Shown here: one piece after another, positions 14,190 to 61,073 of the stretch | Position numbering within the stretch: position 1 is the first letter of the stretch | Layout of the letters: each line of letters begins with the position of its first letter | Source of the DNA: Macrostomum hystrix | Lineage: Eukaryota > Animalia > Platyhelminthes | Direction of reading: 5' to 3' | Assembly: GCA_950097015.1 (NCBI GenBank) | Contig: CATNEN010000001.1 | Span: forward strand, 9,548,001 to 9,612,000 | DNA: 64,000 bases | Program-made: the position numbers and the translations under genes | The notes under the pieces: generated by a model | Databases searched by the model: none | The model's input: only the letters and a program-made list of their open reading frames with translations | What the model was told of the DNA's origin: nothing

Positions 14190-14814
14190 TAGAATCGTAG
14201 TTGACACAGCTATAGAATCGTAGTTGACACAGCTATAGAATCGTAGTTGACACAGCTATAGAATCGTAGTTGACACAGCTATAGAATCGTAGTTGACACA
14301 GCTATAGAATCGTAGTTGACACAGCTATAGAATCGTAGTTGACACAGCTATAGAATCGCAGTTGACACAGCTATAGAATCGTAGTTGACACAGCTATAGA
14401 ATCGTAGTTGACACAGCTATAGAATCGTAGTTGACACAGCTATAGAATCGTAGTTGACACAGCTATAGAATCGTAGTTGACACAGCTATAGAATCGTAGT
14501 TGACACAGCTATAGAATCGTAGTTGACACAGCTATAGAATCGTAGTTGACACAGCTATAGAATCGTAGTTGACACAGCTATAGAATCGTAGTTGACACAG
14601 CTATAGAATCGTCACTGACACAGCTATAGAATCGTAGTTGACACAGCTATAGAATCGTAGTTGACACAGCTATAGAATCGTAGTTGACACAGCTATAGAA
14701 TCGTAGTTGACACAGCTATAGATACGTAGTTGACACAGCTATAGAATCGTAGTTGACACAGCTATAGAATCGTAGTTGACACAACTATAGATACGTAGTT
14801 GACACAGCTATAGA

Positions 14815-15697
14815 TGTTGTGAGCTGCGTCTCACAATGACCTTGCCCCGACCCCTGCGTCCCTAACCCTTCCACCCCGGCCACCTGCTCAAACCAGTTCT
14901 GGCCGGCCCCGGCTTAGGCCACCCTCCTTTGTCATGTTTTTCGCTCGCCCATTGGCTGTCCCCTGTGCCGACCTCGCTAGTCCAATCAGGCCTCTCGCCA
15001 AGGAGGCTTCTGATTGGCTAGCCGGTCCCCTTCTCTCTCTCTCTCGGCTTGCAGCCGACCCCAGCCCAGCCCTGTTTGCTACCCCCAGCCCTGCGTGGCT
15101 TAGCCCTACCCCGCCCAGCCCTATGCCCTCGCCCCACCCCACGCGGTTATTTATTTGCGCGCGCTGCCCGTGGCCAGCCCGCCCCCACCTGAACTCGTGC
15201 GAGAGCATTGCTGAAGTTAATTTGAAAATCAGAAGCGATTGGACGTAGAAAGTAGAAGCCATAATACACAGCCGGAAGCACCATTTTGCATGAGTTCCAC
15301 ATTCAACCCCTCTCGGTAAGAAAAGTATTCACGCGTTATTTATTTATTTATTATCAAATCTTGTTCCTCTGCCCGACCTCTGCGGTTGCCAAGAGCTCAC
15401 CATCATCCTTCTCATCCAGAGTCTTCCTCGAGTCTGAGAAGTGTCGGTACGCTTCCAGACCATCATCTACCTCTCTCTTGGGCTGTCGAGTGGCTGCCCG
15501 CTCGCAGTCAAAACCTTCAATCAGGGCTTAGCGAGTGTCGGTACGCTCCAAGTCCATCCCGTCTCTCCTCGGAGTGCCTGGACGCCTCGAGGGTCGCTGC
15601 TTCCCCTCCCTCTACTCCCGGCAAGCTTTGGGCGGTCCGTACCCGAACCCCCACTACCGCGTTGGCGAACTGCCGACAGAACGCGAAAACTACAACA
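14815..15697 (-). mobile_element. Solo LTR (883 bp), copy 2, apparently identical to copy 1
   Basis: Same termini and TAGA TSD, offset 1508 bp; ORF-track translations identical. Confidence 0.85.
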
Positions 15698-18600: not shown

Positions 18601-20224
18601 TCGCAGCTGACACAGCTATATAATCGCAGCTGACACAGCTATAGAATCGCAGCTGACACAGCTATAGAATCGCAGCTGACACAGTAGCTAGAACTTTTGG
18701 CCAAATGGTTCCTAAATTGAATCTCCGAATGCTAAGAGTGACCTCATTCATTCGGCCGGTATCATAAAATATTGCAGCAACAAGTGCAGTCTCTGTGAAT
18801 GAATGATGAGGTTACTTCCTTAGTAGCTGTTGGCTAATCTAGCCCTTTCAGCTAGCTCAAAGTAATAAGCCAGCGACCTCCTCAACTCGACAATTCAGAG
18901 AGGGAAAGTTTGAGAATATCTGGCACCAATATAAAGGAATTATTAATCCTTTGAGTCCCAAATTATGGGTTCATAATTCATATTTCATAAAATATCAGAG
19001 CATTGTCGAGATATTCAACGATTCCCGTTGGGGTGTCTGATGGCAAAAAACCCCAAACTAGGAATCTTTGTGTCACAAAATTTCACAATGAAACCATGTT
19101 GCTATTATTGTTGATTAATATTGTATTGATTATATCCGTAATTACTTTATTATTGAACCAATATGAGTTCGCCATGAAGACCATGTTGTCTTTCTACGAA
19201 TAAAAACACACTGCGAATGCCACGCAGGAATTTTAACACTTCCAACACAGTAAAAAAGCAGCTTGAACGGCATTCTAAGCTATTATATATTACACTTTGT
19301 GTCGGCATTTCACATTAGCAAACATTCTTCCCAAATACCTCCAGTAGCCGTTCTGAAGTGTCGCAAGCTAAGCTTTAAGTGGATCATTGGGGGGTCACCA
19401 AAGGCACACAGCAGGCCGCAGTGATCGTTTCGGCACAAGTTGAGAGGGGAGAAACGACACTGAAGGTTTCTTAGGTTCACGACCGTATAGGGACAGAAAA
19501 AACACGCGGCTGAGATAGATTTGGAGGATCTGGTGATCATGCCGGACTGGCGGTTCGCTTTCCCTTTCTCTCCCTCCCTGCCGGCCTCTCCAAGAACTTG
19601 AATGACACCAAGAGGCGCTGATTGAGTCAACCTCAGCAGGGGCGTGGCTTATTTTAAATATGAGCACGTCTGTTCAGATTTGTGTCGACTCACACAAACT
19701 GTACGCTATTGTCGTTGAATATTGGGCTATTGGCACCGGATGTAGCAGCTCTGCCCCCCTCCAATGGTCCAGTCGTTCATTCTATTATAGGTAGAGGTAA
19801 TTGTGGAACAGGGGTCGATGCACCTCACACCAAGGACCAGTCTTAGGTCGTGTGGACGGTGGGAATCTCTCATCCTTGCCCGTTGTGCACCTGATTCAGA
19901 ATGCAGATTTCGTGACAGGCATTCATTAGCAAGCTATAGCGAGGATAGTGTCATGCCAGGTGAAAAAATGTAGGGTCAAGTGCCTTATAGAGTAATATAA
20001 GGCATTAATTTCTTAATGCGCACCCGATATTTTTTCGGAGAGAACACCAGGAACAAAAAATGCCGCAGCGTTATCGAATTAGAAGGCCTACATTTTTCTT
20101 AATTCATATAGGTTTATTTCCTATGACACTTTACATCATACGCTCGTATTATGTTTGATAGCCGGTACGTCTTAGTTTGTACTGTAGACTGTACACTTTT
20201 TTGTCTGAAAGACTGCGCATCTTA

Positions 20225-41009: not shown

Positions 41010-43245
41010 TTCCTCTCCCATCACCACATCCTCTCCCGCCACCCCATCCAAGACCGTCACCCCATCCTATCCCGTCACCCCATCCTCTCATCACCCATTT
41101 TCTCCCATCACCCCATCCTCTCCCATCACCCCATCCTCTCCCATCACCCCATTCTCTCCCCATCCTATCCCATCACCCCATCCTCTCCCATCACCCCATC
41201 CTCTCCCATCACCCCATCCTCTCCCATCACCCCATCCTCTCCCATCACCCCATCCTCTCCCATCACCCCATCCTCTCCCATCACCCCATCCTCTCCCATC
41301 ACCCCATCCTCTCCCATCACCCCATCCTCTCCCATCACCCCATCCTCTCCCATCACCCCATCCTCTCCCATCACCCCATCCTCTCCCATCACCCCATCCT
41401 CTCCCATCACCCCATTCTCTCCCCATCCTATCCCATCACCCCATCCTCTCCCATCACCCATCCTCTCCCATCACCCATCCTCTCCCATCACCCATCCTCT
41501 CCCGTCACCCATCCTCTCCCGTCACCCCATCCTCCCCCATCACCCATTCTCTCCCATCACCCATCCTCTCCCATCACCCATCCTCTCCCATCACCCCATC
41601 CTCTCCCATCACCCCATCCTCTCCCATCACCCCATCCTCTCCCATCACCCCATCCTCTCCCATCACCCCATCCTCTCCCATCACCCCATCCTCTCCCATC
41701 ACCCCATCCTCTCCCATCACCCATCCTCTCCCATCACCCATCCTCTCCCATCACCCATCCTCTCCCATCACCCATCCTCTCCCGTCACCCATCCTCTCCC
41801 GTCACCCCATCCTATCCCGTCACCCCATCCTCCCCCATCACCCATCCTCTCCCATCACCCATCCTCTCCCATCACCCATCCTCTCCCATCACCCATCCTC
41901 TCCCATCACCCCATTCTCTCCCCATCCTATCCCGTCACCCCATCCTCCCCCATCACCCATCCTCTCCCATCACCCATCCTCTCCCATCACCCATCCTCTC
42001 CCATCACCCCATCCTCTCCCATCACCCCATTCTCTCCCCATTCTCTCCCATCACCCCATCCTCCCATCTCCAATCCCCCGTCACCCCATCCTATCCCATC
42101 ACCCATCCTATCTCATCACCCCATCCTCTCCCATCACCCCATCCTCTCCCATCACCCCATTCTCTCCCCATCCTATCCCATCACCCCATCCTCTCCCATC
42201 ACCCATCCTCTCCCATCACCCATCCTCTCCCATCACCCATCCTCTCCCATCACCCATCCTCTCCCATCACCCATCCTCTCCCGTCACCCATCCTCTCCCG
42301 TCACCCCATCCTATCCCGTCACCCCATCCTCCCCCATCACCCATCCTCTCCCATCACCCATCCTCTCCCATCACCCATCCTCTCCCATCACCCCATCCTA
42401 TCCCATCACCCCATCCACTCCCATCACCCATCCTCTCCCATCACCCATCCTCTCCCATCACCCATCCTCTCCCATCACCCATCCTCTCCCGTCACCCATC
42501 CTCTCCCGTCACCCCATCCTATCCCGTCACCCCATCCTCCCCCATCACCCATCCTCTCCCATCACCCATCCTCTCCCATCACCCATCCTCTCCCATCACC
42601 CATCCTCTCCCATCACCCCATTCTCTCCCCATCCTATCCCGTCACCCCATCCTCCCCCATCACCCATCCTCTCCCATCACCCATCCTCTCCCATCACCCA
42701 TCCTCTCCCATCACCCCATCCTCTCCCATCACCCCATTCTCTCCCCATTCTCTCCCATCACCCCATCCTCCCATCTCCAATCCCCCGTCACCCCATCCTA
42801 TCCCATCACCCATCCTATCCCGTCACCCCATCCTCCCCCATCACCCATCCTCTCCCATCACCCATCCTCTCCCATCACCCATCCTCTCCCATCACCCATC
42901 CTCTCCCATCACCCCATTCTCTCCCCATCCTATCCCGTCACCCCATCCTCCCCCATCACCCATCCTCTCCCATCACCCATCCTCTCCCATCACCCATCCT
43001 CTCCCATCACCCCATCCTCTCCCATCACCCATCCTCTCCCATCACCCATCCTCTCCCATCACCCATCCTCTCCCATCACCCCATTCTCTCCCCATTCTCT
43101 CCCATCACCCCATCCTCCCATCTCCAATCCCCCGTCACCCCATCCTATCCCATCACCCATCCTATCCCATCACCCATCCTATCCCATCACCCCGTCCTAT
43201 CCCATCACCCGATCCTATCCCGTCACCCCATCCTCCCTTCGCCCA
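41010..43245. repeat. 17/18-bp C-rich minisatellite (CCCATCACCCCATCCTCT)n upstream of ANK-cGLR copy 1
   Basis: Tandem units; a homologous shorter array lies at 55727-56232. Confidence 0.95.
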
Positions 43246-44028: not shown

Positions 44029-47000
44029 ATGGGACAACACATTGGCCTCCAAGGAGCTGCCAGACACGGGCACCTCAAAATAGTTCGACTTCACATGACA
44101 TTTGTCTGGGGCAATCAACGAAAGAATGCATTGTGCGTCAAGACTTGTCAAGTAGCAGCGAGGGAGGGTCAGTTGGAAGTGGTTCGATTTCTTGTGGAGT
44201 CAGTCGCTGACCAAACAATGAGAGATCTGTGCTGCATGAAGGCTGCGTATTATGCTGCAATCGAGGATCAGTGGGAAGTGGTTCCATTTCTTGTGCAGAC
44301 AGTCGCTGACCAAACAATGAGAGATCAGTTCTGCATGAAGGCTGCGGATTATGCTGCAATCGAGGGTCAGTGGGAAGTGGTTCGATTTCTTGTGCAGACA
44401 GTCGCCGACCAAAATATGAAAGATCAGTGCTGCATTAAGGCTACGGATTATGCTGCAAGCGAGGGTCAGTGGGAAGTGGTTCCATTTCTTGTGCAGACAA
44501 TCGCTGACCAAACAATGAAAGATCAGTGCTGCATTAAGGCTACGGATTATGCTGCAAGCGAGGGTCAGTGGGAAGTGGTTCGATTTCTTGTGCAGACAAT
44601 CGCTGACCAAACAATGAGAGATCAGTGCTGCATTAAGGCAACGGTTTTTGCTGTAATCAACGGTCAGTGGGAAGTGGTTCGATTTCTTGTGCAGACAATC
44701 GCTGACCAAACAAAGAGAGATCAGTGCTGCATGAAGGCTGCGGAATCTGCTGCAACCAAGGGTCAGTTGGAAGTGGTTCGATTTCTTGTGCAGACAATCG
44801 CTAACCAAACAATGAGAGATCAGTGGTGCATGAAGGCTGCGGAATCTGCTGCAATCAAGGGTCAGTTGGAGGTGGTTCGATTTCTTGTGGAGTCAGTCGC
44901 TGACCAAACAATGAGAGATCAGTGCTGCATGAAGGCTGCGGAATCTGCTGCAACCAAGGGTCAGTGGGAAGTGGTTCGATTTCTTGTTCAGACAGTCGCT
45001 GACCAAACTATGAGAGATCAGTGCTGCATGAAGGCTGCGGAATCTGCTGCAACCAAGGGTCAGTGGGAAGTGGTTCCATTTCTTGTGCAGACAGTCGCTG
45101 ACCAAAAAATGAGAGATCAGTTCTGCATGAAGGCTGCGGATTATGCTGCAATCGAGGGTCAGTTGGAAGTGGTTCCATTTCTTGTGCAGACAGTCGCTGA
45201 CCAAACAATGAGAGATCAGTTCTGCATGAAGGCTGCGGATTATGCTGCAATCGAGGGTCAGTGGGAAGTGGTTCGATTGCTTGTGCAGACATTCGCTGAC
45301 CAAACAATGAGAGATCAGTTCTGCATGAAGGCTGCGGAATCTGCTGCAATCGAGAATCAGTGGGAAGTGGTTCCATTTCTTGTGCAGACAGTCGCTGACC
45401 AAACAATGAGAGATCAGTGCTGCATTAAGGCTGCGGAATCTGCTGCAACCAAGGGTCAGTGGGAAGTGGTTCGATTGCTTGTGCAGACATTCGCTGACCA
45501 AACAATGAGAGATCAGTTCTGCATGAAGGCTGCGGAATCTGCTGCAATCGAGAATCAGTGGGAAGTGGTTCCATTTCTTGTTCAGACAGTCGCTGACCAA
45601 ACTATGAGAGATCAGTGCTGCATGAAGGCTGCGGAATCTGCTGCAACCAAGGGTCAGTGGGAAGTGGTTCGATTGCTTGTGCAGACATTCGCTGACCAAA
45701 CAATGAGAGATCAGTTCTGCATGAAGGCTGCGGAATCTGCTGCAATCGAGAATCAGTGGGAAGTGGTTCCATTTCTTGTGCAGACAGTCGCTGACCAAAC
45801 AATGAGAGATCAGTGCTGCATTAAGGCTGCGGAATCTGCTGCAACCAAGGGTCAGTGGGAAGTGGTTCGATTTCTTGTTCAGACAGTCGCTGACCAAACT
45901 ATGAGAGATCAGTGCTGCATGAAGGCTGCGGAATCTGCTGCAACCAAGGGTCAGTGGGAAGTGGTTCGATTTCTTGTGCAGACAGTCGCTGACCAAACAA
46001 TGAGAGATCAGTTCTGCATGAAGGCTGCGGATTATGCTGCAATCGAGGGTCAGTGGGAAGTGGTTCGATTGCTTGTGCAGACATTCGCTGACCAAACAAT
46101 GAGAGATCAGTTCTGCATGAAGGCTGCGGAATCTGCTGCAATCGAGAATCAGTGGGAAGTGGTTCGATTTCTTGTTCAGACAGTCGCTGACCAAACTATG
46201 AGAGATCAGTGCTGCATGAAGGCTGCGGAATCTGCTGCAACCAAGGGTCAGTGGGAAGTGGTTCGATTTCTTGTTCAGACAGTCGCTGACCAAACTATGA
46301 GAGATCAGTGCTGCATGAAGGCTGCGGAATCTGCTGCAACCAAGGGTCAGTGGGAAGTGGTTCGATTTCTTGTTCAGACAGTCGCTGACCAAACTATGAG
46401 AGATCAGTGCTGCATGAAGGCTGTGGAATCTGCTGCAATCCATGGTCAGTTAGAGGTGGTTCGATTTCTTGTTCAGACAGTCGCTGGTCAGCGTTCAGGG
46501 AATCAGAGCTGCGAAGGGGCTGGTGAGTCTGCTGAAAGAGAACTTGTCCTAACTTCTCTTCGCAAAATATGCATTGAGGCAGCTTGCTCTCGTCTCCACG
46601 AAGACATTGTGGCTTTTCTCGGACTCGAGCCCTGCTGGCTTCTTCACTCAAGCCAAGTCCTCAGATTTGCCGCCTCGATGGCCACTGAGGGCAGGAACTC
46701 TGTTCTCGCCCAGACCCTGTCTCGAATGCAGCCAGATGAGATCACGCAGCTGCTCTGTCTCTCCATCCAACACGGTCATGTTGCGCTGGCTCTTACTGTC
46801 ATGGAAGACAAGCAATTCAGCAGAGAATATGTCGATTCACCCGACGGCGGTGGAGCTACAGCCCTCATGCTGTCAGCTGATGCAGGTCATCACGAGCTCA
46901 TTGACAAGCTGCTAGAATTAGGTGCGTCAGTGAGGGCACAAGACAGTCAGGGTCGGACAGCTCTGTCGCGAGCTTGTGAAGCGGGTCATGTGCGAGCAGC

Positions 47001-49697
47001 CAAGAGTCTGATGGTCAGAGGCGCCGATTCGAGTCATCGAGACACTCGGGGTAGGACATGCGCGCAGCTGGCCGAGCAACACCCGCAGCTGCTGCGACTG
47101 CTGGCGCCCCAGGCTTTGATGTAAGCTGAATTTCTTAAACTGAATTTTCTCATCTCCGGAGACACTGAAGTGCCGCAATTTCTCAAATTGAATTTCGTTA
47201 CTTTTTTGCACAGAAAGTTTGCGTCACACTCTTTAGCTCTTAATTGGAGCAACTGCGCTAGTTTCAACGCTAGGTTTTAGGACACAACTTGTCAATTAAT
47301 TTCTTAATCGTACTTTTAGCTCGTATTTTGCTGGCAATAAAATTTGGGGCTAATTCACATTTCAGCCCTGATGCAAAAGCCACTGTTACTCGTTCTTTAA
47401 GTTTCGGAGGCTTACGGACCGAGACAGAATTTCAGCAGGATCTGGATGCGTAAGTATTCTTTTCGTTTCGCTTGCCAGTTATTTTTGCAGCGTTGATTGG
47501 CTCACCATTTGCCTCATTCTAGGATTTCCCAAAATCCTTTTGATTTTAGCAGCTCTTTGCTCGCAAGCTGGCTCGAGTGGCGAGCTGTACCAAAGAAGCA
47601 TATAACTTGAAAAGTGTGATTTCATAATATTCCAGAACCCGTAGCACTCTCTTGGTCTTGACCTGGAAACCAGCTGGTGTCCTGTCTCGAGACAGGAAAT
47701 ATCAATAATACAGAATATTCAGCATTTAACTAAAAACTCTAGTACATGTAAGAGAGGCCAGAACTTTCCTTTGTTCTGCAGGCTCCAAGACGAGTCACGG
47801 CACGACAGTCGGCTCAGTGAAGATCTGCACCGGCTGCTTAGCGAGGCGGGATTCACTCAGCACAGAGCTCAGTGCCAGCAGCGAATGGCTGCCTGGCTGG
47901 AAGGAGTCGCTCGATTCCTCACTCAAGAGGACAGGTGGATGACAGGTAGCTTCGCAGAGGGCTGGGCCAACAGTGTAGTGCAAGTGAACGGCAGGACAGC
48001 GGCAGACTCCGACATCGACTGGACTGTGCTCGTTGCTGGGCAGGAGTTTCACTTGGAGGGCCACTGCATTGAAAGGTTGTACACCAGCTGCAAAGTGTCT
48101 ACGAAGCTGAAGGTCACGGAGGGTCACGCGCAGGTGGCCGTGGGATCAGGTGAGTTCCTGGACAATTTTGAACAGTCTTGGGACCTGGGACTTAACTCAC
48201 AACTTTTGGATCCCTCACTCACCGTCCTTTGCAGGCAGCCAGCCGGCCGTCAGAACCGATGCATGCGGTGTGCGGCCTGCTCAGGACACCTGCCATGCGA
48301 TCCAGTGCTGCAGCAAGTTCAGTGAGCACAGAATCAAGAAGCTTATAAAGACTGACAACTTTGATGCAGTTCACCTCGTGAGAGCGACCAGACCGAACTC
48401 GACCAACGAGCTCAGACTGAGCTTCAGCTTCCACGAGAGAGAGGCCATGAGACGGCTGAGCACAGTCCAGGGACAGCTTTTTACACTCATCAAATTTATC
48501 TTCAAAAGATACTTGCCACACACTCTGGACACACCTGGACTCAAGACCTACCATGCAAAGACTCTGCTCTTCTTCATGCTGGAGAAGCATGGCACAGATC
48601 CAAATGCTGAAGATTGGCAGCCTCAGAATCTTATCTCACTGCTGAAGGAGTCTCTCGACATGATGCTGAGCTTCATCTACTCAAGCAGCTCACCCGATGA
48701 GTGCATGCCGCACTTCTTCATGTCCGACGCTCCGCTCTACTTCAAGAACGCTGGAATCGGCGGCGACTTCGACAACACGAAGGCGAGGGTTCGAGACCGA
48801 CTGAGAGAGCTGAGAAGCGACATCGGCGGAGTGGTTGAGCAGATAAGGAGACTCGTGAGACCTCTGCAGTCAGAAAATTTCTTCTTTCACCCGTTTACTC
48901 TGCTGCCACTGACAGCGCTTTCCACAGTCACTGAGCTGAAGACATATTACTTTGAAGAGTGTTCGAATGTGTTCAGTGTGGTGCAGCAGTGCATGGCCGA
49001 GCTGCAGTCAGAGTCATCTGACATAGACACCCTGATGAGTCAGCTCAGTCTCCTGCATCAGCTGCGGTGGTGCAAGTGCGCCGCCCTGTGCATGACCGCA
49101 ATTGCTCATCTGAAGTTCGGAGACTCCGAGGAGGCTGAGAGACTCCTGATGGAGCTGCGAGGTCACGAATGCCAAAATGGACTGCGCCCAGAAGATTTCA
49201 GAGAAGTGATGTCCGTCATTCGGCTGCCCTCGGACTCGGACTGGGCGTGGAGGTTCTGCCTCCCCGCACACACTCCGCCTCGATTCCCATTCCTTCCCGA
49301 GTTCACGCAGACTCTGCTCACAGCCAGACTGTCGCAGCCTCGCTCTGAGCACCTGTACGTGAACTTCCGCTGCCTGAGCTGGAGTCTCCAAGCTGAGCTG
49401 CTCCGCAATCGCACAGCAATCGACTTCGGTGCGTGGCGCTCAGAGCTGCAAGAGGACCCGGACTTGGAGGAACTGCTCACTCTGGCTCACTACAGTGACC
49501 AAGCTGAGCACGTGGAGTTCAGTCTGCGACAGATCGTCACGGTCGAAAAACGCGTCGCCATGGAAACGCAGGATGAGAAGAAGATCAGCTGGGTCAGGGA
49601 GAAGCTGGAGCGAATTTGGCGCAATGACATCTCCATGGAGACGGCGGAGCAGCAGAGAGATGGCTGGCTCCACGCAAAGCTGCAGCGGTTTGCATAG
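44029..49697 (+). CDS. Ankyrin-like repeat array + ankyrin + Mab-21/cGAS-like nucleotidyltransferase (cGLR) + helical C-terminus, copy 1; 4 exons, ~1668 aa
   Basis: Exons 44029-47120, 47366-47449, 47782-48149 and 48235-49697 total 5007 nt, in frame, all GT-AG. 24 x 33-aa repeats; canonical ANK (GATALMLSADAGH, GRTALSRACEAGH); NTase MTGSFAEG...DSDID, QDTCHAIQC, LRLSFSFHE, LKTYHAKTLLFF, CMPHFF. Confidence 0.88.
44167..46490 (+). repeat. Coding tandem array of 24 x 99-bp units (last unit partial)
   Basis: GQ(W/L)EVV motif every 99 bp from 44167 to 46444. Confidence 0.95.
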
Positions 49698-51384: not shown

Positions 51385-52420
51385 CGGCCCCATCATCCAC
51401 TCCATCATCCACTCCATCATCCACTCCATCATTCACTCCATCATCCACTTCATCAACCACGCCACCATCAAACTTATCATCCACTTAATTATCCACTCCA
51501 ACATCCACTCCACCATCAAATCCATTATCCATTCCATCATCGGCACCATCATCCACTACAACATCCGGATTCCCGATGTCACAGATTCCCGATGCCACAG
51601 ATTCCCTATGTCACAGATTCCCTATGTCACAGATTCCTGATGTCACAGATTCCTGATGTCACAGATTCCTGATGTCACAGATTCCTGATGTCACAGATTC
51701 CTCATGTCACAGATTCCTCATGTCACCGATTCCTGATGTCACAGATTTCTCAAGTCACAGATTCCTCATGTCACAGATTCCTGTTCTCACAGATTCCCGA
51801 TGTCACAGATTCCTGATGTCAAATGTCACAGATTCCTGATGTCACACATTCCTGATGTCACACATTCCTGATGTCACAGATTCCTGGTGTCACAGATTCC
51901 TGATGTCACAGATTCCTGATGTCACAGATTCCTGATGTCACAGATTCCTGATGTCACAGATTCCTGATGTCACAGATTCCTGATGTCACAGATTCCTGAT
52001 GTCACAGATTCCTGATGTCACAGATTCCTGATGTCACACATTCCTGATGTCACAGATTCCTGATGTCACAGATTCCTGATGTCACAGATTCCTGATGTCA
52101 CACATTCCTGATGTCACAGATTCCTGATGTCACAGATTCCTGATGTCACAGATTCCTGATGTCACAGATTCCTGATGTCACAGATTCCTGATGTCACACA
52201 TTCCTGATGTCACAGATTCCTGATGTCACACATTCCTGATGTCACAGATTCCTGATGTCACACATTCCTGATGTCACACATTCCTGATGTCACAGATTCC
52301 TGATGTCACACATTCCTGATGTCACAGATTCCTGATGTCACAGATTCCTGATGTCACACATTCCTGATGTCACACATTCCTGATGTCACACATTCCTGAT
52401 TTCACAGATGTTCCTGATGT
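51385..52420. repeat. (ATCCACTCCATC)n tract followed by 16-bp minisatellite (ATTCCTGATGTCACAG)n
   Basis: Tandem units visible; the 16-bp array spans 51570-52420. Confidence 0.93.
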
Positions 52421-53492
52421 TGCCATCAACAGCGGTGATCAACCAGTCGAAACGCGGGCGCATGAAGACTTTGACCTGCGGAACAATCTGGCCGAACCAG
52501 CCGAGCTTTCCAATTACCTTCTGAGCAGAGCGCAAGTGCAGCCGATTCTCCTTGCGAGTCTGACTCAGCAGCTTCATCGTCTCCAGGGCCTTTTCCTCGG
52601 GCAGCGTTTTCGTGCCGGTCGCTGTGTTGATACACACGCCAAGGAAGTTGATGCACTGGGCCGGCCTGACCACCTTGTCCCAGTTGATGGTGAAGCCGAG
52701 ACGCTGGAGGATGTCCAGCAGGTAGTTGAAAACAGCAGAAACTTCAGACTCCGACCGCCCAGCAACAGCCCAGTCGTCCAGGTAGTTCACCGTGGCTGTG
52801 AATCCAAGCTTTTGCATGTGACGAGTCACGGCGGCAGAGAGGCGGTGAAAAACCTCGCAAGCAGCTTTGGCACCAATCGGCAGCCTGGTGTCGCAGAGCA
52901 GACTGTCGTGGCTGTCCGTATCAAACTGCCAGGAGAGACCGACGAGGGCGTAGTCCTCCGGCCTTATCGGCACGGACCTGTAGGCATTCTTGAGGTCGAT
53001 CTTGGCCATGTAGCATCCAGGATGAAGATGGCGGACCAGTTGCTGGACAGTGCCGTACTTAATGTGTTTCTGCTGGTCGTAGCAGTCGTTGACCGACTGG
53101 CCGGACGGGTGGGACAGGTCGTGGATCAGGCAGATCCGCCCGTCGGGCTTGGGGATGGCGCCGATAGGATTGACTTTAATCGGACCGCTGCACCTGATGT
53201 ACATCCCCAGGCGCAGCTCCTCCTGGATCTGGGCTTCAACTGCGTCGTGGTGCATCATGGCGGAGGCGTGATTCTTGGACGACGTCATAGGCGGATGACC
53301 AGCGTTGGTGAGGGCGAACCCGTAAACGGCACCTTGCATCAGGAATTCGCGGTCAGGGTCGTCGCTTAGCAAAGCATTCCAGACATCAGGTTTGAGATCA
53401 GACGAAATGGATGAGGAAGTAAAAGCAGAAACACCGGCGGTAAAATCAGGGTAGTCAGCTTGATAAAAAGACTTCAGTTTTTGCACTCGCAC
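52386..53492 (-). CDS. Reverse transcriptase of the DIRS/Ngaro-like element (3'-truncated)
   Basis: YLDD catalytic motif and conserved RT domains; the ORF runs into the minisatellite. Confidence 0.88.
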   Translation of the reverse strand: MRVQKLKSFYQADYPDFTAGVSAFTSSSISSDLKPDVWNALLSDDPDREFLMQGAVYGFALTNAGHPPMTSSKNHASAMMHHDAVEAQIQEELRLGMYIRCSGPIKVNPIGAIPKPDGRICLIHDLSHPSGQSVNDCYDQQKHIKYGTVQQLVRHLHPGCYMAKIDLKNAYRSVPIRPEDYALVGLSWQFDTDSHDSLLCDTRLPIGAKAACEVFHRLSAAVTRHMQKLGFTATVNYLDDWAVAGRSESEVSAVFNYLLDILQRLGFTINWDKVVRPAQCINFLGVCINTATGTKTLPEEKALETMKLLSQTRKENRLHLRSAQKVIGKLGWFGQIVPQVKVFMRPRFDWLITAVDGNIRNICEIRNV

Positions 53493-54790
53493 CAGTCACG
53501 TGACCTGCGAGCTGACCATGGGCGTGAGCCGGATGCGGTGTCTGGCAGCCTTGGATCTTGCAGACGTGGCGGAACTTGCAGCGCTGGTGTGTGCAGCCCG
53601 CCTCGGAGTTGAACCTCAAGCGAATAGGCCGGGAAGTTGCCGATGTTGAGGGCAGCTGATGTTGGTTGAGTTGCTTAGCCATAGTAAACCGCAGGTTGTT
53701 CGGCGCGTTGAGATGCTTGTGGTACAACTGAGGGGGCTCCTCGCCCCAGAGCATGCCGGTCTCAGCCACCAGTTTTCGATAGTCTTCATCAAACTCCCAG
53801 ATCACGGATTGGGGGTAATCAGCATCCAGCAGCTCTCCAATCTTCCGGTTGTAGTCAAGATAGCCAAGAACATCAGTCAGGAGACCGGTGTCTTCGGAAG
53901 CCGGCTGTAGCTTCTTTCGGATCATCTCTCGCAGGATGATGGAGTTAGCGGCTATCCATTGACCAACCGAGATGCTAGACAGTTTTGGCTCCTGCTTCCT
54001 GAATTTGAGAGCGCCATTCTCCATGGTAGCTATCAGCTGCTCCTGACTGGCTGAACCGACTCTACTGGACGGCTTCATGTGGTCTCTGATCAACTGCGCT
54101 TTGTGGGTTGAGACGCGGGAGTTGCTGGGCTGGAGCTGCGTCGCCTCTCTCACCCCAGAGACAAAAACATCAGACAAATGCAGGTTAGCGTGAAGTTCTG
54201 CTCACCTGGCGTTGGCTGAGGCTGCACCGCCGGTCGTTGCTGGGAGTGAAGCTGCTGCTGGAGTTCACGGCGACGACCCTCCAGGACACGCACTTCGAGC
54301 AGCTCCACCTCCTGCCGCAGCGCCGCCAGCTGGTCGCTCCTCGCCCCCGGAGACGCCTCGCCCGCACTGCCGTTACCGACATCGGTGCCAGGAGAAGCCC
54401 TCGCGGTTTCTTGAGTGTTGACCTGCTCTGAGCTGAGTGCTGTGGATAGACGCTGGGACGCTTGTTGCCAGTAGCAGGTAGGCCTCTATTCTGCAGCTCT
54501 GCCTTGAGTTAAGACGCTGTGGGCTAGCACTCATATCGCAAAGGGCTGCTGAGCAAGGTAAAAAAATTTTAACAAACCGCGGCAGAGGTGAGACGGTAGG
54601 AGCGCGGGGGCTTAAAGCGAGCCGGGGCAGCCAGCCACCCCACGCCCCCCGCCTCCAGAGTACACGCACGCACGCACAAAGCACCACCCCGACGGTGTGT
54701 CTAACACACCTTACTCAGAGAGTAACGAACACAAAAAATCCCGAGTGCCGAATGCTCGAGCGATTTAAACAAATACAACCCGTAAAAGCC
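52420..54790 (-). mobile_element. Truncated tyrosine-recombinase-class (DIRS/Ngaro-like) retrotransposon: gag-like ORF + overlapping RT
   Basis: RT with ICLIHDLS, KIDLKNAYRSVPI, LPIG, NYLDDW, GFTINWDK, FLG. The upstream ORF ends in a Cys/His knuckle (CTHQRCKFRHVC...C..PHPAH) and overlaps RT in another frame. RNase H and YR are absent. The 5' boundary is approximate. Confidence 0.82.
53455..54177 (-). CDS. Gag-like ORF of the DIRS/Ngaro-like element (5' part disrupted)
   Basis: WEFDEDYRKL...W motif and C-terminal Cys/His cluster; lies immediately upstream of RT. Confidence 0.65.
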   Translation of the reverse strand: MSDVFVSGVREATQLQPSNSRVSTHKAQLIRDHMKPSSRVGSASQEQLIATMENGALKFRKQEPKLSSISVGQWIAANSIILREMIRKKLQPASEDTGLLTDVLGYLDYNRKIGELLDADYPQSVIWEFDEDYRKLVAETGMLWGEEPPQLYHKHLNAPNNLRFTMAKQLNQHQLPSTSATSRPIRLRFNSEAGCTHQRCKFRHVCKIQGCQTPHPAHAHGQLAGHVTGASAKTEVFLSS

Positions 54791-55726: not shown

Positions 55727-56232
55727 ACCCCATCCTCCCCTATCACCCCATCCTCCCCTATCACCCCATCCTCCCCTATCACCCCATCCTCCCCTATCAC
55801 TCCATCCTCCCCTATCACTCCATCCTCCCCTATCACCCCATCCTCCCCTATCACTCCATCCTCCCCTATCACTCCATCCCCCCTATCACCCCATCCTCCC
55901 CTATCACCCATCCTCTCCCATCACCCCATCCTTTCATGTCACCCCATCCTCACCTAACACCCAATCCATTCATGTCACCCCATCCTCCCCTATCACCCCA
56001 TCCTCCCCTATCACCCCATCCTCCCCTATCACCCCATCCTCCCCTATCACCCATCCTCTCCCATCACCCCATCCTTTCATGTCACCCCATCCTCCCCTAT
56101 CACCCATCCTCTCCCATCACCCCATCCTTTCATGTCACCCCATCCTCCCCTATCACCCATCCTCCCCTATCACCCCATCCTCTCCCATCACCTCATCCTC
56201 TCCCATCACCTCATCCTCTCCCATCACCCCAT
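55727..56232. repeat. 18-bp C-rich minisatellite (CCCCTATCACCCCATCCT)n upstream of ANK-cGLR copy 2
   Basis: Paralogous to 41010-43245. Confidence 0.92.
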
Positions 56233-56821: not shown

Positions 56822-59800
56822 ATGGGACAACACATTGGCCTTCAAGGAGCTGCCAGACACGGGCACCTCAAAATAGTTCGACTTCACATGACATTTGTCA
56901 GGGGCAATCAACGAAAGAATGCATTGTGCGTCAAGACTTGTCAAGTAGCAGCGGGGGAGGGTCAGTTGAATGTGGTTCGATTTCTTGTGGAGACAATCGC
57001 TGACCAAACAATGAGAGGTCTGTGCTGCATGAATGCAACGGTTATTGCTGTAATCAACGGTCAGTGGGAAGTGGTTCCATTTCTTGTGCAGACAATCGCT
57101 GACCAAACAATGAGAGATCAGAGCTGCATGGAGGCTACGGATTATGCCGCAAACAACGGTCAGTGGGAAGTGGTTCGATTTCTTGTGCAGACAGTCGCCG
57201 ACCAAAATATGAAAGATCAGTGCTGCATTAAGGCTACGGATTATGCTGCAAACAAGGGTCAGTGGGAAGTGGTTCCATTTCTTGTGCAGACAATCGCTGA
57301 CCAAAGTGTGAGAGATCGATGCTGCATGAAGGCTGCGGAATCTGCTGCAATCAAGGGTCAGTTGGAAGTGGTTCCATTTCTTGTGCAGACAATCGCTGAA
57401 CAAACAATGAGAGATCAGTGCTGCATGGAGGCTACGGATTATGCCGCAAACAACGGTCAGTGGGAAGTGGTTCGATTTCTTGTGCAGACAGTCGCCGACC
57501 AAAATATGAAAGATCAGTGCTGCATTAAGGCTACGTATTATGCTGCAAACAAGGGTCAGTGGGAAGTGGTTCCATTTCTTGTGCAGACAATCGCTGACCA
57601 AACAATGAGATATGAATGCTGCATGGAGGCTACGGATTATGCTGCAATCACCGGTCAGTGGGAAGTGGTTCGATTTCTTGTGCAGACAGTCGCTGACCAA
57701 ACTATGAGAGATCAGTTCTGCATGAAGGCTGCGGAATCTGCTGCAATCAAGGGTCAGTTGGAAGTGGTTCGATTTCTTGTGCAGACAATCGCTGACCAAA
57801 CAATGAGAGATCAGTGCTGCATGAAGGCTGTGGAATCTGCTGCAATCAATGGTCAGTTGGAAGTGGTTCGATTTCTTGTTCAGACAGTCGCTGGTCAGCG
57901 TTCACGGAATCAGAGCTGCGAAGAGGCTGGTGAGTCTGCTGAAAGAGAACTTGTCCTAACTTCTCTTCGCAAAAAATGCATTGAGGCAGCTTGCTCTCGT
58001 CTCCACGAAGACATTGTGGCTTTTCTCGGACTAGAGCCCTGCTGGCTTCTTCACTCAAGCCAAGTCCTCAGATTTGCCGCCTCGATGGCCACTGAGGGCA
58101 GGAACTCTGTTCTCGCCCAGACCCTGTCTCGAATGCAGCCAGCTGAGATCACACAGCTGCTCTGTCTCTCCATCCAACACGGTCATGTTGCGCTGGCTCT
58201 TACTGTCATGGAAGACAAGCAATTCAGCAGAGAATATGTCGATTCGCCCGACGGCGGTGGAGCTACAGCCCTCATGCTGTCAGCTGATGCAGGTCATCAC
58301 GAGCTCATTGACAAGCTGCTAGAATTAGGTGCGTCAGTGAGGGCACAAGACAGTCAGGGTCGGACAGCTCTGTCGCGAGCTTGTGAAGCGGGTCATGTGC
58401 GAGCAGCCAAGAGTCTGATGGTCAGAGGCGCGGATGCGAGTCATCGAGACGCTCGGGGTCGGACATGCGCGCAGCTGGCCGAGCAACACCCGCAGCTGCT
58501 GCGACTGCTGGCGCCCCAGGCTTTGATGTAAGCTGAATTTCTTAAACTGAATTTTCTCATCTCCGTGAGACACTGAAGTGCCGCAATTTCTCAAATTGAA
58601 TTTCGTTACTTTTTTGCACAGAAAGTTTGCGTCACACTCTTTAGCTCTTAATTGGAGCATCTGCGCTAGTTTCAACGCTAGGTTTTAGGACACAACTTGT
58701 CAATTAATTTCTTAATCGTACTTTTATTTTGCTGGCAATAAAATTTGCGGCTAATTTACATTTCAGCCCTGATGCAAAAGCCACTGTTACTCGTCCATTA
58801 AGTTTCGGCGGCTTACGGACCGAGACAGAATTTCAGCAGGATCTGGATGCGTAAGTGTTCTTTTCGTTTCGCTTGCCAGTTATTTTTGCAGCGTTGATTG
58901 GCTCACCATTGCCTCATTCTAGGATTTCCCTAAATCCTTTTGATTTTCGCAGCTCTTTGCTCGCAAGCTGGCTCGAGTGGCGAGCTGTTCCAAAGAAGCA
59001 TATAACTTGAAAAGTGTGATTTCATAATATTCCAGAACCCGTAGCACTCTCTTGGCCTTGTCCTAGAAACCAGCTGGTGTCCTCTCTCGAGACAGGAAAT
59101 ATCAATAATACAGAATATTCAGCATTTAACTAAAAACTCTAGTACATGTAAGAGAGGCCAGAACTTTCCTTTGTTCTGCAGGCTCCAAGACGAGTCACGG
59201 CACGACAGTCGGCTCAGTGAAGATCTGCACCGGCTGCTTAGCGAGGCGGGATTCACTCGGCGCAGAGCTCAGTGCCAGCAGCGAATGGCTGCCTGGCTGG
59301 AAGGAGTCGCTCGATTCCTCACTCAAGAGGACAGGTGGATGACAGGTAGCTTCGCAGAGGGCTGGGCCAACAGTCTGGTGCAAGTGAACGGCAGGACAGC
59401 GGCAGACTCCGACATCGACTGGACTGTGCTGGTCGCTGGGCAGGAGTTTCACTTGGAGGGCCACTGCATTGAAAGGTTGTACACCACCTGCAAAGTGTCT
59501 ACGAAGCTGAAGGTCACGGAGGGTCACGCGCAGGTGGCCGTGGGATCAGGTGAGTTCCTGGACAATTTTGAACAGTCTTGGGACCTGGGACTTAACTCAC
59601 AACTTTTGGATCCCTCACTCACCGACCTGTGCAGGCAGCCAGCCGGCCGTCAGAACCGATGCATGCGGTGTGCGGCCTGCTCAGGACACCTGCCATGCGA
59701 TCCAGTGCTGCAGCAAGCTCAGTGAGCACAGAATCAAAAAGCTTATAAAGACTGAAAACTTTGATGCAGTTCACCTCGTGAGAGCGACCAGACCGAACTC

Positions 59801-61073
59801 GACCAACGAGCTCAGACTGAGCTTCAGCTTCCACGAGAGAGAGGCCATGAGACGGCTGAGCACAGTCCAGGGACAGCTTTTTACACTCATCAAATTTATC
59901 TTCAAAAGATACTTGCCACACACTCTGGGCACACCTGGACTCAAGACCTACCATGCAAAGACTCTGCTCTTCTTCATGCTGGAGAAGCATGGCACAGATC
60001 CAAATGCTGAAGATTGGCAGCCTAAGAATCTTATCTCACTGCTGAAGGTGTCTTTCGACATGATGCTGAGCTTCATCGACTCAAGCAGCTCACCCGATGA
60101 GTGCATGCCGCACTTCTTCATGTCCGACGCTCCGCTCTACTTCAAGAACGCTGGAATCGGCGGCGACTTCGACAACACGAAGGCGAGGGTTCGAGACCGA
60201 CTGAGAGAGCTGAGAAGCGACATCGGCGGAGTGGTTGAGCAGATAAGGAGACTCGTGAGACCTCTGCAGTCAGAAAATTTCTTCTTTCACCCGTTTACTC
60301 TGCTGCCCCTGACAGCGCTTTCCACAGTCACTGAGCTGAAGACATATTACTTTGAAGAGTGTTCGAATGTGTTCAGTGTGGTGCAGCAGTGCATGGCCGA
60401 GCTGCAGTCAGAGTCATCTGACAGAGACACCCTGATGAGTCAGCTCAGTCTCCTGCATCAGCTGCGGTGGTGCAAGTGCGCCGCCCTGTGCATGACCGCA
60501 ATTGCTCATCTGAAGTTCGGAGACTCCGAGGAGGCTGAGAGACTCCTGATGGAGCTGCGAGGTCACGAATGCCAAAATGGACTGCGCCCAGAAGATTTCA
60601 GAGAAGTGATGTCCGTCATTCGGCTGCCCTCGGACTCGGACTGGGCGTGGAGGTTCTGCCTCCCCGCACACACTCCGCCTCGATATCCATTCCTTCCCGA
60701 GTCTACGCAGACTCTGCTCACAGCGAGACTGTCACAGCCTCGCTCTGAGCACCTGTACGTGAACTTCCGCTGCCTGAGCTGGAGTCTTCAAGCTGAGCTG
60801 CTCCCCAATCGCACAGCAATCGACTTCGGTGCGTGGCGCTCAGAGCTGCAAGAGGACCCGGACTTGGAGGAACTGCTCACTCTGGCTCACTACAGTGACC
60901 AAGCTGAGCACGTGGAGTTCAGTCTGCGACAGATGGAGATCGTCACGGTCGAAAAACGCGTCGCCATGGAAACGCAGGATGAGAAGAAGATCAGCTGGGT
61001 CAGGGACAAGCTGGAGCGAATTCGGCGCAAAGACATCTCCATGGAGACGGCGGTGCAGCAGAGAGATGGCTGA
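56822..61073 (+). CDS. Ankyrin-like repeat array + ankyrin + Mab-21/cGAS-like nucleotidyltransferase (cGLR), copy 2; 4 exons, ~1198 aa
   Basis: Exons 56822-58527, 58767-58850, 59182-59549 and 59635-61073 total 3597 nt, in frame. Same motifs as copy 1; 10 repeats; TGG>TGA shortens the C-terminus by 10 aa. Confidence 0.88.
56960..57897 (+). repeat. Coding tandem array of 10 x 99-bp units (last unit partial)
   Basis: GQ motif every 99 bp from 56960 to 57851. Confidence 0.95.

What the first reader, a model, noticed from the sequence alone, without database searches (positions are those of the whole stretch)
44167..46490. Repeat variation sits on the predicted ankyrin binding face, a natural DARPin-like code
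Seen: the framework GQWEVVxFLVQTxADQTMRDQxCMKA is nearly fixed, while helix-1 positions xxx-AA-xx vary as cassettes. Copy 1 order: AYY-IE, ADY-IE, TDY-SE, TDY-SE, TVF-IN, AES-TK, AES-IK, AES-TK, AES-TK, ADY-IE, ADY-IE, AES-IE, AES-TK, AES-IE, AES-TK, AES-IE, AES-TK, AES-TK, ADY-IE, AES-IE, AES-TK, AES-TK, VES-IH. Copy 2 uses a largely different alphabet: TVI-IN, TDY-NN, TDY-NK, AES-IK, TDY-NN, TYY-NK, TDY-IT, AES-IK, VES-IN. Most inter-unit differences change amino acids. Known: the AAxxG positions of ankyrin repeats line the binding groove and are among those randomised in DARPin libraries. Inference: diversifying selection on a modular recognition surface, analogous to TALE RVDs or HET-E repeats.
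Basis: partly seen in the sequence, partly recalled or inferred. Interest (0 to 1): 0.85.

Follow-up and report, generated by a model that had tools for sequence, protein, structure and literature searches.

The report
Hypervariable ankyrin array on flatworm cGAS-like gene
Two young duplicate flatworm genes join a run of near-identical ankyrin-type repeats, which differ mainly at four or five surface residues under positive selection, to a cGAS-like signalling enzyme; this looks like a fast-reshuffling sensor of the kind known from fungal immune receptors, but what it binds is untested.

Summary
All 23 + 9 cassette strings match the sequence exactly, and the units hit Pfam ankyrin models.

- **Selection:** The five variable codons carry 29 replacement and 0 silent changes on the unit tree (omega about 4.2, p 8e-6). 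A recombination-proof count still gives omega 3.3 (p 0.005).
- **Replication:** The same codons, above all the "xx" of AAxxG, are hypervariable in 12 other arrays of this genome and in Macrostomum lignano proteins.
- **DARPin mapping:** Only that "xx" pair matches DARPin-randomised positions 13 and 14. The "xxx" triplet aligns with the canonical L-H-L framework.
- **Fold:** The units lack TPLH and two structural glycines. A pLDDT-96 model gives one short and one 17-residue helix per unit, with no beta-hairpin.
- **Framework:** It is not held by detectable constraint in this pair (omega about 1.2). Its uniformity reflects recent unit amplification.

RNA contigs splice the array exon in frame to cGAS-like (Mab-21) exons. 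The two genes differ by dS 0.02-0.04, yet carry 23 and 9 units and share one cassette type.

The closest precedent is the fungal NLR ankyrin repeats. A TALE-like code has no support. Earlier follow-ups in this scan reported sibling genes in this genome.

The parts
44029..47120 (+). Copy 1, exon 1: start codon, N-terminal cap, ankyrin-type array and conserved C-terminal ankyrin domain. The splice donor GT is at 47121.
   Evidence: Open frame. Pfam Ank_2 E 1e-101. RNA contig joint 47120->47366 with GT..AG ends.
44167..46443 (+). Copy 1 array: 23 regular 99-bp (33-residue) units. The hypervariable codons are unit columns 27-29 and 32-33, that is nt 79-87 and 94-99 of each unit.
   Evidence: Selection counts.
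46444..46542 (+). Copy 1 unit 24: a degenerate terminal unit, 71/99 identical to its nearest unit.
46543..47120 (+). Non-repetitive C-terminal ankyrin domain with two canonical repeats. It is conserved in 30 or more paralogs.
   Evidence: Best Pfam stretches at residues 935-1004. Genome search. dN/dS 0.29 between the two copies, computed over 46444-47119, which includes unit 24.
47366..47449 (+). 84-nt linker exon, in frame.
   Evidence: Joints 47120->47366 and 47449->47782, GT..AG, in contigs of three runs. Translation has no stop.
47782..48149 (+). cGAS-like exon carrying the GS...DSDID nucleotidyltransferase motif.
   Evidence: Sequence, joints. The motif is conserved in 19 of 20 paralog loci.
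48235..49697 (+). cGAS-like exon with the Mab-21 C-terminal domain, ending at the stop codon.
   Evidence: Pfam Mab-21_C E 4e-07, 30.5 bits against a cut-off of 24.1. PDB cGLR1 8gjy at E 0.004, cGAS and Mab21L1 weaker. 85-nt intron joint.
56822..58527 (+). Copy 2, exon 1. The array of 9 regular units is at 56960-57850, with a degenerate unit at 57851-57949.
58767..58850 (+). Copy 2 linker exon, 81/84 identical to copy 1, flanked by AG and GT.
59182..59549 (+). Copy 2 cGAS-like exon with the GS...DSD motif.
59635..61073 (+). Copy 2 cGAS-like C-terminal exon. Its stop comes about 8 codons earlier than in copy 1.

Best explanation
The array is the N-terminal domain of an expressed gene of about 1668 residues (by exon arithmetic). 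The gene joins an ankyrin-type solenoid to a cGAS-like (Mab-21 family) nucleotidyltransferase. It belongs to a family of at least 30 genes in this flatworm genome, whose closest database relatives are all from Macrostomum lignano. Unequal crossing-over keeps duplicating, deleting and reordering whole 99-bp units, so the units stay about 92% identical and unit number changes quickly. Against that uniform background, replacement changes build up faster than silent ones at four or five codons at the C-terminal end of the long inner helix and the turn after it. These are ankyrin positions 9, 10, 13 and 14, with position 8 marginal. They form a solvent-facing stripe that runs along the stacked units. 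Most likely the stripe is a ligand-contact surface under diversifying selection. Shuffling units then creates new composite surfaces, and ligand binding controls the attached enzyme, which would make a nucleotide second messenger. Shown here: the array, the splicing, the family, the young duplication and the excess of replacement changes. Inferred: the surface location (from an alignment to designed ankyrin proteins and helix periodicity, not from coordinates), ligand binding, control of the enzyme, and enzyme activity.
For: Spliced RNA contigs from three runs of one study join 46959-47120, the 84-nt exon, 47782-48149 and 48235-48473, all with GT..AG ends. The exon phases are in frame. A contig over 46457-46903 reaches into the last array unit, and contigs that loop back at 46484-46486 show further array units in the RNA. 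On the unit tree the hypervariable codons carry 29 replacement and 0 silent changes (omega 4.2, p 8e-6). A minimum count that recombination cannot inflate gives omega 3.3, p 0.005. Using only columns 32-33, chosen from the other arrays, omega is 5.2, p 3e-5. In the 12 other arrays omega at these codons is 1.0-5.5 and is individually significant in 7. Pooled omega is about 3.0 at columns 32 and 33, against 0.06-0.35 at core columns 6, 9, 22-24 and 30. M. lignano arrays show their highest entropy at the same columns. Columns 32-33 align without gaps to DARPin positions 13 and 14. DARPins bind through their randomised positions on the concave face (PMC8229355). The family-alignment AlphaFold model has pLDDT 96.3 and pTM 0.86, and every top Foldseek hit is an ankyrin protein. 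Variability has a helical moment on the long helix (p 0.003), marking a stripe of columns 17, 21, 25, 28 and 32. The two copies differ by dS 0.02-0.04 with dN/dS 0.29-0.62 outside the array. Yet they have 23 and 9 units and share 1 cassette, and the third units of the two arrays differ only at columns 32 and 33. Nineteen of 20 paralog loci carry the enzyme exons with a conserved GS...DSD motif.
Against: Outside the five codons, omega is about 1.2 in this pair, so constraint on the scaffold is not shown here. Columns 1, 7 and 13 are as diverse as the named positions in copy 1, and column 22 nearly so. In the other arrays silent changes are also about 1.5-fold enriched at these codons (p 0.002), so a local mutation or age effect cannot be fully excluded. 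Normalised to local silent counts, their omega falls to about 1.4. Position 8 (A/T/V) sits on the buried helix face and has a family omega of about 1.0. I could not read model coordinates, so the concave-face claim rests on homology and periodicity. No ligand, enzyme product or allelic variation was tested. STING was found only as one sub-threshold hit (25.6 bits against a cut-off of 27; nothing at E <= 0.1 on the called ORF).
Confidence: 0.6

Rival explanations
1. Neutral repeat turnover. The array is a young, rapidly amplifying coding minisatellite. Exposed residues are simply unconstrained, a few old unit types were amplified by chance, and the apparent omega above 1 comes from few events, gene conversion and codon-path counting.
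For: Framework omega is about 1.2 and variable sites split 15/15/14 by codon position. Six of the 23 copy-1 units are exact duplicates of another unit. The genome is full of minisatellites. Silent changes are mildly enriched at the same codons in other arrays.
Against: Relaxation alone cannot push omega above 1, yet omega stays at 3.3 (p 0.005) in a count immune to recombination. The same codons stand out in 12 independent arrays and in a second species. Core columns show omega 0.06-0.35 across the family. There are no indels in 34 units and no stop codon despite 87 inferred changes (chance of that 0.015). The gene is spliced and transcribed, and its flanks evolve at dN/dS 0.29-0.62.
Confidence: 0.2
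2. The array is a scaffold or regulator rather than a diversifying sensor. It would hold the enzyme inactive, oligomerise it, or dock it to a conserved host partner or membrane. Unit number and surface residues would tune length, charge or geometry, not ligand specificity.
For: Ankyrin domains often act as adaptors. The arrays are strongly acidic (net charge -29 and -12). The N-terminus MGQ... could be a myristoylation signal (read). The C-terminal ankyrin domain next to the enzyme is conserved.
Against: A conserved partner predicts purifying selection on the contact surface, not omega of 3-5 at the same few codons in many paralogs. It also does not predict near-complete replacement of cassette types between duplicates with dS 0.02-0.04.
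Confidence: 0.12
3. A TALE-like modular code. Each unit would read one element of a linear polymer (a base or a residue) through its variable residues, so the cassette order spells a target sequence.
For: Only the formal resemblance: tandem near-identical units with a few variable residues in fixed positions, plus the fact that some cGAS-like receptors sense nucleic acids (10.1101/2023.02.22.529553).
Against: The arrays are acidic (pI 4.6-4.7) and the variable residues are net acidic. Nucleic-acid-sensing cGLRs are reported to have a high isoelectric point. Runs of identical units and 2-unit blocks repeated three times look like recent amplification rather than a spelled target. No ankyrin protein is known to me that reads a polymer unit by unit (my own knowledge).
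Confidence: 0.03

Closest known systems
Fungal NOD-like receptors with highly internally conserved ANK, TPR or WD repeats (HET-E/HET-D/NWD family; Dyrka et al. 2014, PMC4986451)
   Same: Near-identical tandem repeats. Rapid change in unit number. Positive selection at about five codons per ankyrin unit that map to the inner helix and concave side. Unit shuffling proposed to create new binding surfaces. The repeats are attached to a signalling or effector domain of an immune-type protein.
   Different: This is an animal gene, and the partner domain is a cGAS-like nucleotidyltransferase, not NACHT or NB-ARC. The array is N-terminal. The hairpin and loop positions are not variable, and the modelled units have no hairpin at all. 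Allelic unit-number polymorphism, shown in Podospora, was not tested here.
Designed ankyrin repeat proteins (DARPin libraries)
   Same: 33-residue units aligned without gaps. The two most variable positions equal randomised positions 13 and 14. Identical scaffold units are stacked with variable surface residues. Best Foldseek TM-scores are up to 0.66.
   Different: DARPin positions 2, 3, 5 and 33 are not hypervariable across the family. Natural positions 9 and 10, which are fixed H and L in DARPins, do vary. TPLH, G4 and G27 are absent. The model shows a 17-residue inner helix and no beta-turn.
Ankyrin-repeat cGAS-like receptors catalogued by Li et al. 2023 (10.1101/2023.02.22.529553)
   Same: The ANK plus cGLR architecture is listed as a minor class of animal cGLRs. 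A Macrostomum lignano cGLR (PAA86972.1) with a similar GSFAE...D.D motif is in their screening table.
   Different: That paper does not mention near-identical, hypervariable arrays, and it says most flatworms have only Mab21-like proteins. No activity, ligand or product is known for this clade.
TAL effector repeats with repeat-variable di-residues
   Same: Near-identical tandem units that differ at two adjacent residues in a fixed position.
   Different: A different fold. TALEs read DNA one base per unit, whereas these arrays are acidic and show no sign of a per-unit register. No homology.

Membership tests
Ankyrin repeat (Pfam clan: Ank, Ank_2, Ank_4) | 33-residue period and a significant match to the family profiles | tested here: met
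   99-bp period with no indels. Ank_2 E 1e-101 and 4.6e-51. Ungapped alignment to DARPins and ankyrin-1, E down to 8e-24.
Ankyrin repeat (Pfam clan: Ank, Ank_2, Ank_4) | Canonical structural residues: TPLH motif and the three glycines that end the beta-turn and both helices (PMC9611651) | tested here: not met
   The array units have K, A and E/D/Y/V in place of T, P and H. They have C and V/I/F in place of two of the glycines. Only the glycine after helix 1 is kept. The two C-terminal repeats outside the array keep the G-x-T-A-L motif in place of canonical G-x-T-P-L (read).
Ankyrin repeat (Pfam clan: Ank, Ank_2, Ank_4) | Stacked helix-turn-helix solenoid with a beta-hairpin finger | tested here: inconclusive
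   The AlphaFold model built from a 28-sequence family alignment has pLDDT 96.3. All top Foldseek hits are ankyrin proteins, but TM-scores reach only 0.5-0.66. Each unit is a 10-residue plus a 17-residue helix with no strand or hairpin. This is a model only.
cGAS-like receptor / Mab-21 nucleotidyltransferase | Mab-21 fold domains | tested here: met
   Mab-21_C at 30.5 and 27.5 bits, above the 24.1 cut-off. PDB cGLR1 8gjy at E 0.004, cGAS and Mab21L1 at E about 0.1. The N-terminal Pfam model is not matched.
cGAS-like receptor / Mab-21 nucleotidyltransferase | Catalytic G[SG] and [DE]x[DE] motif plus a third acidic residue | tested here: inconclusive
   GSFAEGW...DSDID is present and conserved in 19 of 20 paralog loci. 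The third acid was assigned only by eye (FDAV in exon 3). The joined protein was not folded.
cGAS-like receptor / Mab-21 nucleotidyltransferase | Makes a nucleotide second messenger that a receptor such as STING reads | not testable with these tools
   STING_LBD gives a single sub-threshold hit in the genome (25.6 bits against 27), not matched at E <= 0.1 on the called ORF.
Hypervariable, highly internally conserved repeat receptors (fungal NLR type) | High identity between units together with fast change in unit number | tested here: met
   92% matches. 23 against 9 units between duplicates with dS 0.02-0.04. The paralog open frames holding the arrays span 236-1810 residues.
Hypervariable, highly internally conserved repeat receptors (fungal NLR type) | Positive selection limited to a few codons per unit | tested here: met
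   Omega 3.3-4.2 at five codons (p 0.005 to 8e-6), replicated in other arrays. I used counting methods, not likelihood codon models.
Hypervariable, highly internally conserved repeat receptors (fungal NLR type) | Selected sites lie on the ligand-binding surface | tested here: inconclusive
   Two of the five sites equal DARPin binding positions 13 and 14. The stripe on one helix face has p 0.003. No coordinates or accessibility values were available.
Hypervariable, highly internally conserved repeat receptors (fungal NLR type) | Central NACHT or NB-ARC NOD domain | tested here: not met
   Pfam finds only ankyrin and Mab-21_C domains. It therefore works like these receptors but is not an NLR.
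TALE-like repeat code | One unit reads one element of a linear target | not testable with these tools
   Indirect evidence only, and it points the other way: the arrays are acidic with pI 4.6-4.7.

The most novel reading that the evidence does not exclude
Macrostomum flatworms carry an inherited, fast-reshuffling repertoire of dozens of sensors. In each, a stack of near-identical ankyrin-type units presents a positively selected stripe of residues and is wired directly to a cGAS-like enzyme. This would be an animal counterpart of the fungal hypervariable-repeat receptors, and a way of giving cGAS-like receptors programmable ligand specificity that has not been described.
Probability: 0.4. Interest if true: 0.8.

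Novelty: new variant of a known kind. Interest (0 to 1): 0.62.

Why it matters
How most of the several thousand animal cGAS-like receptors choose their ligands is unknown. A family whose ligand-facing part is a modular, positively selected repeat stack would offer a tractable natural system. Paralogs and recent duplicates such as this pair are ready-made specificity variants on the same enzyme. It would also show that the strategy of uniform repeats, unit shuffling and a few selected surface codons, known from fungal NLRs, arose independently in an animal. The atypical unit (no TPLH, long inner helix, no hairpin) may interest repeat-protein designers.

Tried and rejected
- **Opposite-strand frame:** The 516-residue open frame at 44893-46443 on the minus strand is a by-product of a repeat unit that has no stops. 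Splice signals and Pfam hits are all on the plus strand.
- **Repeat finder:** The repeat finder on the array returned only redundant families and added nothing beyond.
- **N-terminal Mab-21 model:** The Pfam model for the N-terminal Mab-21 domain was not matched by the exon, nor by full-length M. lignano relatives.
- **STING:** One sub-threshold hit in the genome, and no Pfam match at E <= 0.1 on the called ORF. I make no claim that a STING partner exists.
- **Literature:** Searches for Macrostomum with cGLR, with Mab-21 and with ankyrin repeat found nothing on these arrays. The library lacks most subscription journals.
- **First model:** The single-sequence AlphaFold model was mediocre overall (pLDDT 68) and was replaced by the family-alignment model.
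- **Earlier notes:** A word search of earlier findings for the structural oddities returned nothing.
- **Mutation bias:** CpG bias could explain at most a few changes (A to V at column 27, E to K at column 33). It cannot explain all four bases occurring at the second position of codon 32.
- Frames were checked by exon arithmetic only.
Full report
**What is there**

The window looks eukaryotic. It holds dozens of minisatellites and a reverse-transcriptase ORF. A second array lies at 56960-57893.

Both arrays sit in long plus-strand open frames: 44029-47124 (1031 residues) and 56822-58531 (569 residues). That is 23 regular units plus a degenerate 24th in copy 1, and 9 plus a degenerate 10th in copy 2. 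Pfam ankyrin models match at E 1e-101 and 4.6e-51.

One overstatement: the "nearly fixed" framework is polymorphic at unit columns 1, 3, 7, 8, 13, 17, 22 and 24. In copy 1, columns 1, 7 and 13 are as diverse as the named positions, and column 22 nearly so.

**The array is one exon of a larger gene**

Downstream of each array lie open frames that match Pfam Mab-21_C above its cut-off. Contigs from three small runs of one study are spliced, so they are RNA. One 853-nt contig joins four pieces:
- 46959-47120
- an 84-nt exon at 47366-47449
- 47782-48149
- 48235-48473

All joints have GT..AG ends. The exon lengths (3092, 84, 368 and 1463 nt) keep one frame with no stop until 49695-49697. By arithmetic that gives about 1668 residues.

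Another contig covers 46457-46903, and contigs that loop back within the array show that array units are in the RNA. The second exon carries GSFAEGW...DSDID, the G-S and D-x-D motif of this enzyme class. The last exon matches solved cGLR1 (8gjy, E 0.004) and, more weakly, cGAS and Mab21L1. Copy 2 has the same exons with intact splice sites.

**Family and species**

The non-repetitive C-terminal ankyrin domain has at least 30 paralogs at 56-74% identity in this 220-Mb genome. Most lie on the same contig, in open frames of 236-1810 residues. Nineteen of 20 fetched paralog loci carry the enzyme exons downstream, with a conserved GS[YF]AEGW...DSD motif.

The closest database proteins are all from Macrostomum lignano, at 53-62% identity for near-full-length matches. 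Many combine ankyrin repeats with Mab-21_C, and some with a kinase domain. The genome is therefore a related flatworm, not M. lignano itself.

Earlier follow-ups in this scan had already described sibling genes elsewhere in this genome. I treated those notes as leads and re-tested what I use here.

**Is the variation more than chance, and is it selected?**

Variable nucleotide columns split 15/15/14 across codon positions, so there is no third-position excess.

| Test (copies 1 + 2, 32 units) | Five named codons (columns 27-29, 32-33) | Other 28 codons |
|---|---|---|
| Changes on a maximum-likelihood unit tree with parsimony states | 29 replacement, 0 silent | 46 replacement, 12 silent |
| Omega against the array-wide silent rate | 4.2 (binomial p 8e-6) | about 1.2 (not different from 1) |
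| Minimum changes needed to connect the distinct codons per column | omega 3.3 (p 0.005) | omega 1.25 |

The second count matters because gene conversion between units could inflate tree counts of common variants, and it cannot inflate the minimum count.

To avoid circularity I defined the sites from other arrays. In 13 other array loci (two of them identical, so one was dropped from the later counts), columns 32 and 33 are among the five most diverse in 11 and 12. Tested in this window, those two columns give omega 5.2 (p 3e-5).

Across the 12 independent arrays, omega at the five codons is 1.0-5.5 and is individually significant in 7. Pooled per-column values are about 3.0 at columns 32 and 33, 1.7 at column 28, 1.45 at column 29 and 1.0 at column 27. 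Core columns 6, 9, 22-24 and 30 show 0.06-0.35. M. lignano arrays have their highest entropy at columns 32 and 33, with column 28 also near the top.

Caveats:
- These are counting methods, not likelihood codon models.
- Silent changes are about 1.5-fold enriched at the same codons in the other arrays (p 0.002).
- The scaffold of this particular pair shows no detectable constraint. Its uniformity comes from recent amplification: six of the 23 copy-1 units are exact DNA duplicates of another unit, and a 2-unit block recurs three times.
- No indels in 34 units, and no stop among 87 inferred changes (chance 0.015), argue that the frame is maintained.

**How young is the pair?**

Outside the array the two copies differ by dS 0.02-0.04 in all but the 27-codon linker exon, which has too few changes to estimate. 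Their introns are 97.6-98.7% identical. dN/dS is 0.29 for the C-terminal ankyrin domain, 0.39 for the motif exon and 0.62 for the last exon. Both copies therefore look functional.

In that short time the arrays came to hold 23 and 9 units and to share only one cassette, AES-IK. The third units of the two arrays differ by exactly two nucleotides, both replacement changes, at columns 32 and 33.

**Where the variable residues sit**

The units align without gaps to designed ankyrin proteins.
- Columns 32 and 33 fall on DARPin positions 13 and 14. These visibly vary among the DARPin repeats in that alignment, and they lie among the randomised positions on the concave binding surface (PMC8229355).
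- Columns 27-29 fall on L8-H9-L10 of TPLHLAA, which is canonical framework.
- DARPin positions 2, 3, 5 and 33 correspond to columns 21, 22, 24 and 19. These are not hypervariable across the family.

The units lack T, P and H of TPLH and two of the three structural glycines. An AlphaFold model of ten units, built with a 28-sequence in-register family alignment, has pLDDT 96.3 and pTM 0.86. It gives each unit a 10-residue helix (columns 3-12) and a 17-residue helix (columns 16-32), with three-residue turns and no hairpin. All top Foldseek hits are ankyrin proteins, at TM-scores of 0.5-0.66.

I could not read model coordinates. Instead I tested whether per-column omega has a helical moment on the long helix. 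It does (0.46, permutation p 0.003), and it points the same way as in the other arrays. It marks a stripe of columns 17, 21, 25, 28 and 32, opposite a conserved face of columns 16, 19, 23, 26 and 30.

So "one surface" is supported at the level of helix periodicity. "Concave face" follows only by homology with the inner helix of ankyrin repeats.

**Mechanism and rivals**

My best reading (confidence 0.6) is this. Unit shuffling plus positive selection on an exposed stripe creates diverse binding surfaces on a sensor domain that controls a cGAS-like enzyme.
- **Neutral turnover (0.2):** it fits the unconstrained scaffold, but not omega above 1 replicated at the same codons in many arrays.
- **Conserved-partner scaffold or autoinhibitor (0.12):** it predicts purifying selection on the contact surface, not diversifying selection.
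- **TALE-like code (0.03):** it has only a formal resemblance. The arrays are acidic (pI 4.6-4.7, net charge -29 and -12), whereas nucleic-acid-sensing cGLRs are reported to be basic.

**Comparison with what is known**

Dyrka et al. 2014 described fungal NLR ankyrin repeats with high internal conservation, unit-number polymorphism and five positively selected positions on the concave side (PMC4986451). That is the closest functional precedent. This gene has no NOD domain, so it is not an NLR.

Li et al. 2023 list ANK-cGLR as a minor architecture and included an M. lignano cGLR in their screening table. They do not describe hypervariable arrays. No paper in the searchable library does so for Macrostomum.

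**Verdict**

This is a real, expressed feature and a new variant of a known kind. The function is untested.

Noticed in passing
window 41011-43235 and 55727-56232: A C-rich 17-18-bp minisatellite lies just upstream of both gene copies and is part of the duplicated segment. It is 2.2 kb long before copy 1 and 0.5 kb before copy 2.
   Followed up: no
window 52386-54177, minus strand: A retroelement lies in the spacer between the two gene copies. One ORF of 368 residues matches Pfam RVT_1 (E 1e-12). An adjacent 240-residue ORF has no Pfam match.
   Followed up: partly
window 44029-44046 and 56822-56839; paralog loci L031-L034: The proteins start MGQHIG..., and paralogs start MGQKIS or MGQKTS. A glycine at position 2 with a small residue at position 6 resembles an N-myristoylation signal, which would place the sensors at a membrane. 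Read; no predictor was run.
   Followed up: no
window 61071-61073: The enzyme reading frame of copy 2 stops about 8 codons earlier than that of copy 1.
   Followed up: partly
L051 (G000:C2:9103029-9106496), match at C2:9104529-9104996 minus: This is the only STING ligand-binding-domain match in the genome and it is sub-threshold (25.6 bits against a cut-off of 27, E 8e-4). The called 307-residue ORF gives no Pfam hit at E <= 0.1. Whether this flatworm has a STING-type receptor for a cGLR product remains open.
   Followed up: partly
window 10841-18684 and elsewhere: The window has an extreme minisatellite load: 57 Tandem Repeats Finder rows, including a 23-bp unit repeated about 340 times over 7.8 kb.
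   Followed up: no
proteins P0018, P0023, P0024, P0033 (Macrostomum lignano): Relatives of the same C-terminal ankyrin domain are fused to a protein kinase domain instead of, or as well as, Mab-21_C. The ankyrin module is therefore combined with different output domains.
   Followed up: no
window 44893-46443, minus strand: A 516-residue open frame runs on the opposite strand of the array. It is a side effect of a repeat unit with no stops in that frame, not a gene.
   Followed up: yes
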